DNA of 63,953 bases, filler included, from Octopus bimaculoides (GCF_001194135.2; 7 parts of 7 records of this genome joined end to end with filler, not necessarily neighbours in it); one strand, 5' to 3'; shown: positions 42,766 through 46,239, counted from the whole stretch's first letter. Notes: generated from the letters alone by a model not told the origin. Numbers and translations are program-made.

Positions 42766-44381
42766 TGATAGATAGGTATAAGAAAGAAAGAAACAAAAAA
42801 TAGGAAAATGGGGCGATATAGATAAAGAGAGGGAGGTGGGGGAGGGATTGTTAGACACACAGACAGACAGATAGATCCTACCCATCACAGACCAAACATC
42901 TGTTTCCATTCTGAGTAGACTCAGCATTTGTCCATCTTCAACTCCCCTAAGATAACACCAATCTGTGAAATTAGACAGCTGGTCCCCATCTTTAATAAAG
43001 AATTTATCACATTCGGTGCTGCTTCTCCTCTGATTCCATAACTGATATCATAGCCATATCTTTTAAGAATTTCATTCACAGAGATTTTACTTCTATTATA
43101 ATCTCATTCTTTACATTTCTTCATTTCTTGTTGTCTCTTTTTCTTCCTTGATTTCTTTCCTTCTTTATCTCCATCTTTCTCATTTTACTTTCTCTCTCTT
43201 CTTCTCACCCTAATCCTTCTTTGTCTTTTTCTTTTTCTTTTATTTGATCTTTTTTTCTATCTTTCTCTCTTTTCTCTGCTTTTTCCTTCTTCCTCATTTT
43301 TCTTCGCCCCCCCCTCTCTCAAATTTTAATCTTTCTTTTTCTTTTATACAATGTATCTTTCTCTTTTTTCTTCAATTTTTCCCTCTTTCTCCTCCTTCAC
43401 CTTCTCTCTCTCCCTCTCTCTCTAATGCTAATCCTTCTTTCTATATTTCTCCTCCCCCTCTCTCCTTCTCTAATTCTAATCCTTCATTCTCCTTCACCTT
43501 CTCCTCGCCCTCTCTCTCCCCCTAATCCTTAATCCTTTTCTCTTTCCTTCTTTCTCTCTCTCTTTTTATTCCTTTATTTTCCTTCCTTCTTTTCCTTCTT
43601 CTCCTCATCCTGCCTTTTACCATTCCCTTCCTCCCTCCCTCCCTTCCTTCCTTCCCCCAGTCTCTTCTTATTCCCTTTCATTCTTGCCACTAATGACTTG
43701 CAACATTTATGAAGTTAATTAAAAAGGTGAATTATTAGTCATCAACATCATCACTAAACCCATCATCATTGTCATCGTCATCATCATTATCACTATAACC
43801 ATCATCACTATTATCATCATCACTGCTACCACCACCACCATCATCATCATTTTAGTAGTAGTAGTGGTGGTGGTGGTAGCGGCGGCGGCAGTGGTGGTAG
43901 CAACAGCAGTGGTGGTGGCAGCGGCGGCGGCGGTGGTGGTGGTGGTGGCAGCGGCGGCGGTGGTGGTGGTGGATGGTGGTAGTAATAGTAATTTTATCAT
44001 TGTCGTTATCATCATCATCGTTGTCATTATTATTAATTCTTCATTAATTAGAGATTATGATCATTGATAAACATATTCTTTCCGGTCGTCCGTTCTTTGG
44101 CTGATGCGGCAGCATCTGGAGTGGTTCTCATTGCATCGATGGAGTGCTGAGACGGTGCGATGCAAACAGTGATCTTGGTCATGGTGCACGGTGGTGTGAC
44201 AAAGATTATATTTCTACTTACATTACCACTTAGTATCACTTTTATTAATTAATTATTTGTTTAATCCACTTTGCCAACACTGTTATGCAAATTAGACATG
44301 TCAATTTGGTTCGGTCTGAGTTTGTGTCCACTATAAATAGTAATAAGTTATTCTTCTCTCTGAGGCCAGGAAATTAGTGAC

Positions 44382-44426
44382 CAATCTCAGATGAGGCATT
44401 AATAATTGCTGAAACTAGTCAAATTG
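44382..44426 (+). ncRNA. Minimal type I hammerhead, copy 1 (U4 to A substitution)
   Basis: CAATCT-CAGATGA-GGCA(TTAATAAT)TGCT-GAAAC-TA-GTC-AAATTG. Confidence 0.7.
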
Positions 44427-44496
44427 ATTTTATTTTTCTGGTAGCAGAAAGCAAAATCTTTTCATTTGATTCCAGTATGGTATCTGTTTTCTACAA

Positions 44497-44653
44497 AGAA
44501 GTGGCTGTGTGGTAAGAAACTTGCTTACCAACCACATGGTTCTGAGTTCAGTCCCACTGCATAGCACCCTGGGTAAGTGTCTTCTACTATAGCCTCAAGC
44601 CAACCAAAGCCTTGTGGGTGGATTTGGTAGACGGAAACTGGAAGAAGCCCGTC

Positions 44654-44685
<32 letters not shown>

Positions 44686-44877
44686 CTGTGTCTGTGTTTG
44701 TTCCCTGCCACCATCGCTTGACAACCGATGCTGGTATGTTTACATCCCCATAACCTAGCAGTTCAGCAAAAGAGACCAATAGAATGAGTACAAAGAATAA
44801 GTCCTGGGGTCGATCTGTTTGACTAAAGGCAGTGCTCCAGCGTGGCCGCAGTCAAATGACTGAAACAAGTAAAAGAA
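44497..44877 (+). mobile_element. SINE family A, full length, strongly CpG-decayed, inserted in the HHR array
   Basis: Complete head-to-tail match with most CpGs changed to TpG/CpA. Confidence 0.88.
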
Positions 44878-45058
44878 TTTACTAATACCACTTCCTCCAA
44901 AGTTTGCTAAACCTTTCTACTTATAAATAAATGAATTGTTTAATTCACTCTACCAATGCTTTCCAATACTGCAATGCAAATTATGGCTTGGTCTGTGTTT
45001 GTGTTTACTATAAATAGCAATAAGCTACGGTTCTCTTTAGGAACAGGAAATCAATGAC

Positions 45059-45103
45059 TGATCTGTGATGAAGCATTAATAAAGATTGAAATTTTTCAAA
45101 ATG
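45059..45103 (+). ncRNA. Hammerhead copy 2, decayed
   Basis: TGATCT-GTGATGA-AGCATTAATAAAGATT-GAAAT-TT-TTC-AAAATG, positionally homologous to copies 1 and 3. Confidence 0.5.
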
Positions 45104-45386
45104 ATTTCTTTTTCTGATTGCTGAGAACAAAATCACCCAGCGTGATTGGTTTGATCACTATGGTGTCTACTTTATGCTATGAGGTTAAGATAAAATTAAA
45201 AAAGCATTGACTAAAAACACTTGCTCATAAGTTTACCTTACATTTATACTTATAAATTATTTAATTATTTATTTAATTCACTTGCACTGTTATGCAAGTT
45301 AGACAAGACAATTTAGCTAAGTTTATGTATACTATAAATAGCAATAAGCTGTTATTCTCTCAGCAGGCAGGAATTAAATGAATGAC

Positions 45387-45431
45387 TGATCTCTGATGAA
45401 GAATTAGTAAATGCTGAAACTAGTCAAATTA
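45387..45431 (+). ncRNA. Minimal type I hammerhead, copy 3 (intact catalytic core)
   Basis: TGATCT-CTGATGA-AGAATT(AGTA)AATGCT-GAAAC-TA-GTC-AAATTA. Stem II has 5/6 pairs, stem III is the palindrome ACTAGT, the triplet is GUC, and stem I has 5/6 pairs. Confidence 0.8.
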
Positions 45432-46239
45432 ATTTCTTTTCTTGCTTTGATTGGTTTGATGATTATAGAGTCAACTTTGCACAATGAAATATATAACTCT
45501 CATTCATATTGTTGCAAAATGAACTCCTTAACTTATACAGCCATACGTCTGCCTGTCTTGGGGTAAAACAAAGGAGTCTTCATTGGATAGGAAAAGACAT
45601 GCAAAATCAACTTCCAAATGATAATATCACCAAAAAACTATAAAAATCAGCTGATTTACATAATCATAACGAGACGAAATTATAGCAGATAAACTTTACA
45701 ATGGATTAGAATGTTTAGCCAAAAGCAAAGTGTGGAGCAGTGTCTCAAAGACCATAAGGCTTCCAAAGTACTTTACCTCTAATCCAAAAAGTAGATGAAT
45801 TAGATGTTAATTAAGAGTAAGACTGGATTAATTATTTTTAAAAAAATTATAATATTAACGGTATAATTAGAAAATTCGCTAACCTTTGTTAATGAAAGAA
45901 TTGCAGTGTAATTAGCTATTTTAAAAATATCAGCAATAAAGCTGAATGCAGTTTTCAATCAATTTGATACGGTAGAACATTATCCCCATCCTGTCTCGAA
46001 ATTGTTATTCACCAAGCTCTAAAAATGTTCAAGACATTATAAGGAAGGTAACAATAGCATAGAAATGATTTGCATGCAGGAAAACACTAGTTTTCAATAA
46101 AAACACTGCCTGACTAAAATTATAAAACAGAGACTCTACTCGTTTATTTCATATCAGTTTAATAGTGTAGAGATAAAACATAAAAGTTATACAATAAGCA
46201 ACTGGCTTAAACTTGATATCCTACGCTAAGCACAAGGTA

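What the first reader, a model, noticed from the sequence alone, without database searches (positions are those of the whole stretch)
44230..45490. Tandem array of ~325-nt TATA+hammerhead monomers: candidate octopus retrozyme / self-cleaving satellite RNA system
Seen in sequence: three homologous units, each with CTATAAATAG 57-61 nt upstream of a minimal type I hammerhead. The reconstructed consensus is ATCT-CTGATGA-AGCATT(AATA)AATGCT-GAAAC-TA-GTC-AAAT. Copy 3 has a fully intact core. Cleavage-site spacing is 328 nt for copies 2-3, and 677 nt for copies 1-2 including a ~380-bp SINE. Established knowledge: minimal HHRs with a palindromic stem III (here ACTAGT) occur in Penelope pLTRs, newt satellite 2, schistosome Sm-alpha and metazoan non-LTR retrozymes, cleave as dimers and can release monomer-length circular RNAs. 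Inference: this is a relic multimer of a non-coding, HHR-processed retroelement, in which adjacent ribozymes could pair through ACUAGU and excise a ~325-nt monomer. I cannot verify whether this family has been described.
Basis: partly seen in the sequence, partly recalled or inferred. Interest (0 to 1): 0.9.

Follow-up and report, generated by a model that had tools for sequence, protein, structure and literature searches.

The report
Decayed hammerhead-ribozyme tandem repeat relic

Summary
There are three head-to-tail units of about 290-330 nt (25-32% diverged). Each has CTATAAATAG 57-61 nt upstream of a minimal type I hammerhead (HHR) motif, and a 379-bp SINE sits between units 1 and 2. Only unit 3 keeps the catalytic core (CUGAUGA / GAAAC / GUC). 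Unit 1 has U4>A. Unit 2 has C3>G and has lost helix III.

The motif is not chance. A relaxed HHR descriptor hits only unit 3 and 1 of 3000 shuffles. About 15-20 other single-copy loci in the same genome share mainly this 50-65-nt segment, and their majority letters repair the two stem mismatches of unit 3. One paralogous locus in related species shows a head-to-tail junction 1 nt from the predicted cleavage site.

The array, SINE included, is orthologous in at least three related species, so it is old.

No RNA reads map to it, no young or high-copy arrays were seen, and Rfam hammerhead models do not score it.

Best reading: a decayed relic of a non-autonomous, HHR-bearing tandem retroelement (non-LTR retrozyme / Penelope-pLTR type). 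It is a new member of a known kind and of modest interest. One hint remains untested: the unit 3 HHR shows no substitutions across species.

The parts
44205..44499 (+). Unit 1 of the array. The left boundary is approximate; clear homology starts at about 44242.
   Evidence: Alignment A1. BLASTN against units 2 and 3 gives 73-76% identity.
44331..44340 (+). TATA-like box CTATAAATAG of unit 1
44379..44429 (+). Hammerhead remnant of unit 1. The core is CAGAUGA (U4>A). Helix II (GGCAUU/AUUGCU) and GAAAC-UA-GUC are kept. The cleavage-equivalent site is after 44420.
   Evidence: Orthologs in other species read CGGATGA or CGAATGA here, so the core was probably already dead before the species split.
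44500..44878 (+). SINE inserted at the unit 1/unit 2 junction. It has a tRNA-like A/B-box head, an internal (TA)n(TG)n tract and an A-rich tail. AAAGAA is a possible target-site duplication. It lacks the family's first bases (GGCGCAGG).
   Evidence: Hundreds of thousands of contigs pile up exactly on 44500/1-44876/8. ARAGORN finds no tRNA here.
44879..45200 (+). Unit 2
45008..45017 (+). TATA-like box of unit 2
45056..45106 (+). Hammerhead remnant of unit 2. The core is GUGAUGA (C3>G), the 3' strand of helix II has decayed (AAGAUU), and helix III and the cleavage triplet are lost (GAAAUUUUUC).
45201..45490 (+). Unit 3. The right boundary is about 45487. It carries a ~23-28-nt deletion relative to units 1 and 2 and to the orthologs in some of the related-species runs.
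45285..45314 (+). Second well-conserved block of the unit, CACTGTTATGCAAGTTAGACA... It is 90% identical to 44278-44307 and is also matched by paralogous contigs.
   Evidence: the repeat finder family D17. Paralogous pieces cover 45281-45316.
45332..45341 (+). TATA-like box of unit 3, 61 nt upstream of the HHR core
   Evidence: Species C has 45336 A>G.
45384..45434 (+). The only hammerhead with an intact core. Layout: helix I 5' strand 45384-45392; CUGAUGA 45393-45399; helix II 45400-45415 (6 bp with one AxG mismatch, loop AGUA); GAAA 45416-45419; helix III / palindrome ACUAGU 45419-45424; predicted cleavage after C17 = 45425; helix I 3' strand 45426-45434.
   Evidence: Descriptor hit. Family comparison. 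No substitutions in 45389-45441 in the three related-species runs that could be read.

Best explanation
The array is a dead remnant of about 2.9 units of a small, old family of non-coding tandem repeats. Each unit once carried a minimal type I hammerhead ribozyme of the kind found in metazoan non-LTR retrozymes and in the terminal repeats (pLTRs) of Penelope-like retroelements.

Inferred mechanism when the family was alive: a multimeric transcript was made, possibly from the TATA-like box about 60 nt upstream of each ribozyme. A single ribozyme cannot form helix III, which is only 2 bp with a 2-nt loop. Two ribozymes from adjacent units pair through the palindrome ACUAGU to form a double hammerhead and cut after GUC. 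This releases unit-length RNA with 5'-OH and 2',3'-cyclic phosphate ends. Those ends can be ligated into a circle by a host tRNA ligase, and the RNA can be copied back into DNA by a Penelope-like reverse transcriptase.

Shown here: the tandem structure, the hammerhead architecture, family-level conservation centred on the ribozyme with pair-restoring majority letters, a tandem junction at another locus, the age of the locus, and its transcriptional silence in the libraries examined.

Inferred only: cleavage, circularisation, promoter use and the Penelope-like partner.

At this locus units 1 and 2 are inactivated and unit 3 is weakened. Without an active neighbour for dimerisation, unit 3 is probably non-functional.
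For: 1. Three tandem units with the motif in register.
2. A relaxed min-HHR descriptor hits only unit 3, against a shuffle mean of 3.3e-4 hits per 18.4 kb.
3. In organism A, 17-20 contigs at single-copy depth, and 7 raw reads at about 0.7x sampling, match 45376-45440 at 80-90% identity. Similarity falls off on both sides of the ribozyme. The upstream flank consensus of three paralogs is still recognisably the same unit at roughly 65% identity.
4. Family majority letters fit the fold: 45402 A>C restores C10.3-G11.3, 45427 A>G restores C2.2-G1.2, and 45407 G>A gives loop AAUA.
5. Paralogs read in loose ends keep CUGAUGA. One has GUU in place of GUC with a perfect 5-bp helix I (GAUCU/AGAUC).
6. 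One contig each in X17 and X18 joins 45426 directly to 45210. This is a head-to-tail junction of a 217-nt unit variant at another locus, 1 nt from the predicted cleavage site.
7. The units are AT-rich, 28-32% GC, and about 325 nt long, as published for retrozymes (PMC7229834).
8. Helix III has the same geometry as the experimentally cleaving axolotl Ax330 retrozyme HHR, GAAACAUGUC (supplement read).
9. The long helix II, short helix I and small palindromic helix III match the published PLE min-HHR description (PMC4209133).
10. Unit divergence of JC 0.31-0.41, and orthologous copies including the SINE at about 95% identity in species B, C and D, fit an old burst. Octopus PLEs are reported to have expanded at JC ~0.2 (PMC13282606). 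That comparison applies only if the genome is an octopus.
Against: - No Rfam hammerhead family matches at E<=10, even on 131 nt.
- A covariance model built from four validated retrozyme HHRs scores units 1 and 3 at only 8.8 and 7.3 bits (E 1.3 and 3.7), within noise.
- 10.1-11.1 is A-U, not the usual G-C.
- No RNA, cleavage ends or circular junctions were detected.
- The 328-nt monomer does not fold better than shuffles (z = -1.1).
- The family is tiny compared with known retrozyme families.
- The array ends do not coincide with the cleavage site, and no target-site duplication was found.
- No reverse-transcriptase or endonuclease ORF was noticed near the array. This rests on the ORF list of 90 aa or more and on reading by eye six-frame translations of 41500-48500.
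- Paralog sequences could not be retrieved in full, so covariation rests on five listed variant positions and a few flank read-outs.
Confidence: 0.72

Rival explanations
1. These are leftovers of a Penelope-like element itself, for example tandem solo pLTRs after loss or 5' truncation of the RT-EN body, rather than an independent non-autonomous retrozyme family. The ribozyme would be the PLE's own min-HHR.
For: - The HHR is of the minimal PLE type: a 6-bp helix II, a short helix I, a palindromic helix III and no evident loop-loop contacts.
- PLE insertions are typically 5'-truncated and form partial tandems (PMC8557442).
- A 2026 preprint derives vertebrate retrozymes from pLTRs.
- Family flanks are heterogeneous.
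Against: - No RT or GIY-YIG ORF remnant appears among ORFs of 90 aa or more in the 21-kb piece, or by eye in six-frame translations of 41500-48500.
- The array holds three short units, and a paralog has a 217-nt tandem junction with no coding body between ribozymes.
- The two readings overlap. If retrozymes are pLTR derivatives, the difference is one of degree.
Confidence: 0.18
2. The unit 3 hammerhead has been retained by selection: either exapted as a host self-cleaving or regulatory RNA element, or kept as the last functional seed of the family.
For: - There are no substitutions in 45389-45441 (53 nt) in the X14, X15 and X20 runs (labelled species B, C and E), against at least 11 substitution events in the 158 flanking nt. 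A fourth run, X18, shows the same variants as X20 and the same clean block.
- The dead HHR windows of units 1 and 2 carry 3-5 events each.
- A rough Poisson probability of zero events is about 0.02.
- Two runs of unknown type from one study each hold a short contig over unit 3 only.
Against: - The test is post hoc, on few and non-independent lineages.
- Unit 3 carries two stem mismatches relative to the family consensus.
- It has no intact partner nearby for dimer formation.
- Essentially no RNA coverage was found in three RNA-seq runs.
- The TATA box is mutated in species C.
Confidence: 0.07
3. This is an ordinary local tandem duplication or minisatellite in AT-rich DNA, and its hammerhead-like string is a coincidence. 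A related variant: the CUGAUGA...CUGA strings are C/D-box snoRNA-like.
For: - Rfam hammerhead models are silent.
- The only weak Rfam matches on 131 nt are C/D snoRNA families at 10-17 bits, well below their 37-80-bit thresholds.
- There is no significant extra conservation of the motif within the array.
- Genome-wide, a descriptor of this looseness should hit some tens of times by chance (extrapolated).
Against: - About 15-20 independent loci share the ribozyme segment, with pair-restoring majority letters.
- Paralogs have an intact core and a compensated helix I.
- There is a tandem junction at a paralogous locus.
- The C and D boxes are only 16 nt apart, far too close for a snoRNA. This point is from established knowledge.
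Confidence: 0.03

Closest known systems
Metazoan non-LTR retrozymes (Cervera & de la Pena 2020, PMC7229834), including newt/axolotl satellite-2-type repeats
   Same: - AT-rich head-to-tail repeats of about 170-400 nt, each with a type I HHR.
- Helix III is very short and lies inside a palindrome: axolotl Ax330 has ACAUGU, this element has ACUAGU.
- The ribozyme is therefore expected to cut as a dimer between adjacent units.
- There are several genomic loci and variable unit lengths (328 and 217 nt here).
   Different: - Known families have thousands to more than 100,000 copies and abundant linear and circular RNA. This family has about 15-20 detectable loci, and no RNA from this locus was found.
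- Retrozyme HHRs are described as 'canonical': a 6-bp helix I, a 4-bp helix II and loop-loop contacts. This one has a 6-bp helix II, A-U at 10.1-11.1 and no recognisable tertiary contacts.
- Two of the three cores here are mutated.
Minimal hammerheads of Penelope-like element pLTRs (Cervera & de la Pena 2014, PMC4209133)
   Same: - Long helix II (6-8 bp), short helix I (4-5 bp) and a small palindromic helix III.
- Expected dimer dependence and low intrinsic activity.
- High sequence heterogeneity within a genome, with many isolated or truncated copies.
   Different: - No RT-EN ORF lies between or beside the ribozymes here.
- The published hallmark is an unpaired base after A9 followed by G10.1-C11.1. 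That reading fits here only if the final U of helix II is also left unpaired.
- Any link to PLEs in this genome was not tested.
Schistosoma Sm-alpha / W-element satellite-like HHR repeats
   Same: Short, non-coding, tandem or dispersed repeats that carry a type I HHR and behave as non-autonomous retroelements.
   Different: Sm-alpha is SINE-like, high copy and transcribed, and its canonical HHR is active as reported. This element has none of those properties.
Conserved exapted hammerheads of amniotes (Rfam HH9/HH10)
   Same: The only parallel is the hint that the unit 3 HHR is unchanged across species.
   Different: Those are single, monomer-competent HHRs inside conserved host transcripts. 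This one needs a partner, lies in untranscribed repeat-rich DNA, and gives no Rfam match.

Membership tests
Hammerhead ribozyme, type I (minimal or dimeric variant) | Catalytic core CUGANGA / GAAA(Y) / RUH in the right order, with helices I, II and III around it | tested here: met
   Unit 3 reads CUGAUGA ... GAAAC ... GUC. Helix II has 5 of 6 pairs, helix I has 3 of its first 4 pairs (more beyond), and helix III is 2 bp. It is met fully in the three-unit consensus and in the family majority sequence. It is not met in unit 1 (U4>A) or unit 2 (C3>G, helix III lost).
Hammerhead ribozyme, type I (minimal or dimeric variant) | Match to the curated Rfam covariance models (Hammerhead_1 and relatives) | tested here: not met
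   No hammerhead family was listed at E<=10 on the 21 kb or on 45340-45470 alone.
Hammerhead ribozyme, type I (minimal or dimeric variant) | Pair-preserving variation in the helices among related copies | tested here: inconclusive
   Majority letters at 45402 and 45427 restore Watson-Crick pairs. One paralog has U1.5>C, turning G-U into G-C, with GUU in place of GUC. However, full paralog sequences could not be retrieved, only central positions of the short matches are reported by the tool, and 45404 T>G is not compensated.
Hammerhead ribozyme, type I (minimal or dimeric variant) | Self-cleavage after H17 | not testable with these tools
   There are too few RNA reads to see ends. The only indirect hint is a paralogous DNA junction 1 nt from the predicted site.
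Metazoan non-LTR retrozyme | Head-to-tail DNA repeats of about 150-450 bp, low GC, without LTR, PBS or PPT | tested here: met
   The period is 328 nt, and 677 nt where the SINE is included. GC is 28-32%. There are about 2.9 units, with unrelated flanks.
Metazoan non-LTR retrozyme | Several genomic loci or arrays of the same family | tested here: met
   About 15-20 other loci at single-copy depth in organism A, similar numbers in related species, and one paralogous tandem junction. The family is small, and no long or young arrays were seen.
Metazoan non-LTR retrozyme | Expression as unit-length linear and circular RNA | tested here: not met
   In three raw RNA runs (about 6% sampled each), no read of at least 95% identity lies on units 2-3, and no read of at least 97% identity tiles the unique DNA of 44030-46179 apart from stray partial hits. 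No back-joints were seen. RNA contig sets added no match of 90% identity or better. The libraries' selection method is not recorded, and poly(A)-selected libraries would under-represent such RNAs.
Metazoan non-LTR retrozyme | Canonical type I HHR with loop 1-loop 2 tertiary contacts | tested here: not met
   Helix II is 6 bp with loop A(A/G)UA, and helix I has no defined internal loop. The architecture is that of the minimal PLE-type variant.
Penelope-like element (pLTR) | Ribozyme-bearing repeats flanking, or adjacent to, an RT plus GIY-YIG endonuclease ORF | tested here: not met
   No such ORF appears among ORFs of 90 aa or more in 30143-51306. The only RT-like fragment is the C-terminus of a LINE-type protein at 40925-41536 (-), and that identification is by eye. 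Six-frame translations of 41500-48500 show nothing RT-like by eye. The piece contains six N gaps.
Penelope-like element (pLTR) | Sequence similarity of the unit to pLTRs of PLEs in the same genome | not tested
   No eukaryotic genome or repeat library is searchable here. Exact-pattern scans of the metagenome and viral collections found nothing.
C/D-box snoRNA | C box and D box at the two ends of a 60-100-nt RNA, closed by a terminal stem, and a score above the family threshold | tested here: not met
   The best match is SNORD72 at 17.4 bits against a threshold of 43. The boxes are 16 nt apart.

The most novel reading that the evidence does not exclude
The single intact hammerhead (unit 3, 45384-45434) is being kept by purifying selection in several related species although its array is otherwise decaying. 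It would be either an exapted self-cleaving element or a surviving master copy. The paralogous junction 1 nt from the predicted cleavage site would be a genomic footprint of in vivo ribozyme cleavage followed by template switching or circle-templated reverse transcription. That would make this a first cephalopod retrozyme family with a minimal PLE-type ribozyme and its own TATA promoter.
Probability: 0.1. Interest if true: 0.55.

Novelty: new member of a known kind. Interest (0 to 1): 0.3.

Why it matters
If confirmed genome-wide, this would add cephalopods to the animals that carry hammerhead-bearing tandem retroelements. I found no paper in the searchable library that describes hammerheads or retrozymes in octopus or other cephalopods.

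It would also give an example where a minimal, PLE-type ribozyme sits in a short ORF-less tandem unit. That bears on the recent proposal that animal retrozymes are derivatives of Penelope-like pLTRs, which so far has been examined only in vertebrates.

As it stands the locus is an old, silent relic of a small family. It is useful for repeat annotation and as a dated fossil of a past burst. It is not evidence of an active self-cleaving or circular RNA system.

Tried and rejected
- Rfam scans of the whole piece and of 131 nt around unit 3 gave no hammerhead. The many 'miRNA' hits are microsatellite artefacts, and the C/D snoRNA hits are noise.
- A covariance model built from four published, experimentally cleaving retrozyme HHRs (coral, mussel and two axolotl; sequences, alignment A2, model R1) scored units 1 and 3 at 8.8 and 7.3 bits. 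These are local matches covering core to cleavage site, but they lie within noise, and the top hits were spurious stem-I-only matches. The model is too small and too sequence-specific to decide anything.
- Exact degenerate-pattern scans (CTGATGARG-N12-CTGAAACTAGTC) of the metagenome and viral contig collections found 0 matches.
- A search for further units in the 21-kb piece and for partial units in the flanks found none.
- A target-site-duplication search at the array ends found only GATTATA, which is not convincing.
- Folding the 328-nt monomer gave z = -1.1, so there is no viroid-like stability. Cofold of two HHR segments does not by itself predict the double hammerhead, because alternative pairings compete.
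I read the translations by eye instead.
- ARAGORN on the SINE found no tRNA.
- I considered seeding a protein search with a remembered PLE RT/EN consensus to fetch octopus PLE loci. I dropped it as costly and unlikely to single out this species.
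Full report
**What is in the sequence**

Reading 43900-45900 and aligning the three stretches (alignment A1) confirms three head-to-tail units:
- unit 1: about 44205-44499
- unit 2: 44879-45200
- unit 3: 45201 to about 45490

Mean column identity is 74%, and pairwise differences are 25-32% (Jukes-Cantor 0.31-0.41). 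The repeat finder puts the motif-bearing segments in register with spacings of 677 and 328 nt (families D7 and D9).

The extra 379 bp between units 1 and 2 (44500-44878) is a SINE. When contigs of four runs are laid on the region, 10^5-10^6-fold depth piles up exactly between 44500/1 and 44876/8.

CTATAAATAG occurs three times in the window, once per unit, against 0.07 expected. The boxes start 57, 57 and 61 nt upstream of the first core base of the hammerhead-like motif. No further unit or partial unit exists elsewhere in the 21-kb piece, and the flanks are unrelated.

**The hammerhead motif**

Unit 3 reads GACUGAUCU-CUGAUGA-AGAAUU(AGUA)AAUGCU-GAAAC-UA-GUC-AAAUU (45384-45434). This is the order expected for a type I hammerhead (HHR):
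- helix I 5' strand
- C3-A9
- helix II hairpin
- G12-A14
- a two-base-pair helix III (A15.1-U16.1, C15.2-G16.2) around a 2-nt loop
- C17
- helix I 3' strand

The hexamer ACUAGU is self-complementary. Such a helix III cannot hold in a single ribozyme, but two copies can make a 6-bp intermolecular helix. This is the 'double hammerhead' known from newt satellite 2 and from the minimal hammerheads of Penelope-like elements (PMC4209133).

Unit 3 has one mismatch in helix II (A10.3 x G11.3) and one in helix I (C2.2 x A1.2). Unit 1 has CAGAUGA (U4>A). Unit 2 has GUGAUGA (C3>G) and GAAAUUUUUC in place of GAAACUAGUC. Both are changes at invariant core positions, so by established knowledge of the hammerhead core these two copies should be inactive. 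The simple majority consensus of the three units gives a flawless core and a perfect 6-bp helix II.

**Is it more than chance?**

I wrote a relaxed minimal-hammerhead descriptor with these requirements:
- CUGANGA
- a helix II of at least 5 pairs with at most one mismatch
- GAAA
- a one-pair-plus-loop helix III
- U followed by H
- at least 3 of 4 helix I pairs

It hits only 45393 on either strand of the 18.4 kb of real sequence. Only 1 of 3000 dinucleotide-preserving shuffles has any hit. That is convincing for the window. For a genome of a few gigabases it still allows some tens of chance hits, so the family evidence below matters more.

Within the array itself the motif is not significantly better conserved than the rest. 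The HHR has 69% invariant columns against 59% elsewhere, and the TATA block has 17 of 18 invariant columns with permutation p = 0.10. That is what neutral decay after array formation predicts.

**Family evidence from public reads**

The species names are coded by the tools, so I call the source organism A.

Laying DNA contigs of three runs and raw reads of a fourth on 45360-45450 at 80% identity or better gave 17-20 contigs per run. Each has roughly single-copy depth. The 7 raw reads, at about 0.7x sampling, imply a similar copy number. The matches cover essentially only 45376-45440, which is the ribozyme plus a few bases. A 48-65-nt match at 80% or better is far beyond chance in a genome of this size (my estimate).

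Similarity drops at the edges of the ribozyme. However, the 30-nt consensus upstream of three of these paralogs (ATATAACTTAATATTCTCTCTTGATCAGGA) is still recognisably the same unit at roughly 65% identity. The ribozyme is therefore the best-kept part of a diverged repeat family, not a module shared by unrelated elements.

The majority letters among the paralogs are informative:
- 45402 A>C (5 of 6 raw reads, about half the contig depth) restores C10.3-G11.3.
- 45427 A>G (4 of 4 raw reads, about 55% of depth) restores C2.2-G1.2.
- 45407 G>A makes the loop AAUA, as in units 1 and 2.

Unit 3's two stem mismatches are thus private lesions. The family consensus is GAUCU-CUGAUGA-AGCAUU-AAUA-AAUGCU-GAAAC-UA-GUC-AGAU.

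Two paralogs could be partly read from single-contig loose ends. One has ...GAUCU-CUGAUGA...GAAACUAGU-U-AGAUCC. That is the permitted triplet GUU with a perfect 5-bp helix I, in which the G-U pair of unit 3 has become G-C. The other has CAAUCU-CUGAUGA-GGCUGUAA....

A caution applies. The tool lists variants only away from the ends of each short match. I therefore cannot claim that core positions are invariant across the family, and one frequent change (45404 T>G) is not compensated.

**Tandem arrangement elsewhere**

In runs X17 and X18, both from related species, one contig at single-copy depth joins 45426 directly to 45210. The tool reports this as 'goes back 217', with 36 nt on the shorter side and no intervening letters. 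This is a head-to-tail junction at a paralogous locus of a 217-nt unit variant that lacks the 111 nt following the ribozyme.

It shows that tandem organisation is a property of the family rather than a local duplication at this locus. It also places one breakpoint 1 nt from the predicted cleavage site (C17 = 45425). That would be expected if a ribozyme-cut RNA 3' end had been joined to a 5'-truncated unit during reverse transcription. This is one contig per run, so I treat it as a lead.

**Age**

Contigs from organisms B, C and D cover the array at about 95% identity and run from unit 1 into the SINE. Array and SINE therefore predate the split of these species.

In those orthologs the unit 1 core reads CGGAUGA or CGAAUGA, so it was probably already dead in the common ancestor.

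Unit-to-unit divergence implies roughly 0.15-0.2 substitutions per site per lineage.

**Expression**

Three raw RNA-seq runs of organism A were examined, each sampled at about 6% (roughly 12 million reads each).
- No read of at least 95% identity lay on units 2-3.
- Essentially no coverage at 97% or better was found on any unique part of 44030-46179. The SINE and another repeat at 46180-46590 were heavily covered.
- A handful of reads and a few RNA contigs at under 90-95% identity match the ribozyme segment, so they come from paralogs. One is a decayed copy inside a 1.5-kb transcript contig that reads straight through the site.
- No back-joints and no clustering of read ends were seen.

The libraries' selection method is not recorded, so small circular RNAs could be under-represented. 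There is no positive evidence for any RNA from this locus.

Two runs of unknown type from one study each hold a short, low-depth, 100%-identical contig over unit 3 only (45284-45516 and 45361-45533), with empty neighbours. I cannot interpret this.

**A hint of constraint**

In the orthologs from runs X14, X15 and X20 (labelled species B, C and E) there are no substitutions in 45389-45441, a 53-nt stretch that contains the unit 3 ribozyme. At least 11 substitution events are listed in the 158 flanking nt. A fourth run, X18, shows the same variants as X20 and the same clean block. The dead ribozyme windows of units 1 and 2 carry 3-5 events each.

A Poisson estimate for zero events is about 0.02. 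The test is post hoc, the lineages are few and not independent, and the TATA box is hit in species C (45336 A>G). I record this as the basis of the 'novel case', not as a finding.

**Comparison with known families**

The unit size, low GC (28-32%), tandem arrangement and palindromic helix III match metazoan non-LTR retrozymes (PMC7229834). The experimentally cleaving axolotl Ax330 ribozyme has GAAACAUGUC where this one has GAAACUAGUC (supplement).

The ribozyme itself, with its 6-bp helix II, short helix I and no evident loop-loop contacts, fits better the 'minimal' variants described in the pLTRs of Penelope-like elements. Those are reported to be weakly active and dimer-dependent.

[quoted passage not shown] This locus would fit that picture.

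Membership is incomplete in four respects:
- Rfam hammerhead models do not score it.
- A small covariance model from four validated retrozyme ribozymes gives only noise-level local hits on units 1 and 3.
- No RNA was found.
- No RT/EN ORF is nearby.

I found no paper in the searchable library that describes hammerheads or retrozymes in cephalopods. Reviews state only that such repeats occur 'from molluscs to arthropods'.

**Verdict**

The implied active, self-cleaving, circular-RNA 'system' is not.

The element is a new, decayed and small-family member of a well-known kind. Interest is modest at 0.3.

The points worth following are a genome-wide census, a comparison with the PLE pLTRs of the same genome, the apparent invariance of the one intact ribozyme across species, and the paralogous junction next to the predicted cleavage site.

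Noticed in passing
window 44500-44878: A very high-copy SINE on the + strand, with a tRNA-like A/B-box head, an internal (TA)n(TG)n tract and an A-rich tail. It is inserted at the unit 1/unit 2 junction with a possible AAAGAA target-site duplication. Other genomic copies extend about 8 nt further 5' (GGCGCAGG), so this copy is 5'-truncated. It is present at the orthologous site in species B-D. It is heavily represented in RNA-seq, with a sharp pile-up of read ends at 44832. ARAGORN finds no tRNA in it.
   Followed up: partly
paralogous locus seen in runs X17 and X18, laid on window 45210/45426: One contig per run joins 45426 directly to 45210. This is a head-to-tail junction of a 217-nt unit variant, with the breakpoint 1 nt past the predicted hammerhead cleavage site. 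It was not seen in organism A runs.
   Followed up: partly
window 45284-45533: Runs X25 and X44 (same study, library type not recorded, about 0.42 Gb of contigs each) each contain a short low-depth contig that is 100% identical to unit 3 only. Neighbouring DNA is absent from both. This could be open chromatin, RNA or chance.
   Followed up: no
window 45389-45441: There are no substitutions in this 53-nt block (the unit 3 hammerhead) in the three related-species runs that could be read, against at least 11 events in the 158 flanking nt. The dead hammerhead windows of units 1 and 2 have 3-5 events each.
   Followed up: partly
window 44382-44395: Five differences between organism A and species B/C fall within 14 nt of the unit 1 hammerhead remnant (44382, 44383, 44389, 44390, 44395). 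This is far denser than the ~5% average and might reflect gene conversion or a mutational hotspot.
   Followed up: no
window 44278-44307 and 45285-45314: A second conserved block of the unit, CACTGTTATGCAA(A/G)TTAGACA, is 90% identical between units 1 and 3 and is also matched by paralogous contigs. It contains a small inverted repeat (TTGCA...TGCAA in unit 3). Its function is unknown.
   Followed up: no
window 45445-45450: A ~19-28-nt stretch (TTTCGTGACAGGGGATGAGATCTTTTGG in X17) is present in the orthologs of X17, X18 and X20 but absent in organism A and in X14 and X15. It corresponds to the segment that unit 3 lacks relative to units 1 and 2, so it is a lineage-specific deletion.
   Followed up: no
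window 46180-46590: Another repeat, with two copies of AAAAGGATGAAAGGCAAAGTCGACCTTGG... 193 nt apart (repeat finder D16). It has high RNA-seq coverage and many joints to other places, so it is probably another SINE family.
   Followed up: no
window 40925-41536 (-): An ORF fragment ending ...RLRWYGHVVRMEEDSCVKKC...GRGRPRKTW looks by eye like the C-terminal end of a LINE-type reverse-transcriptase protein. It is interrupted by an N gap and is unrelated to the array.
   Followed up: no
window 30143-51306 (many sites, e.g. 39736-39818, 32993-33076): All the sub-threshold Rfam 'miRNA' matches (mir-297, mir-3149, mir-466 and others) lie on (TA)n/(TG)n microsatellites and are artefacts. The piece is unusually rich in microsatellites and low-complexity tracts and has six N gaps.
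   Followed up: yes
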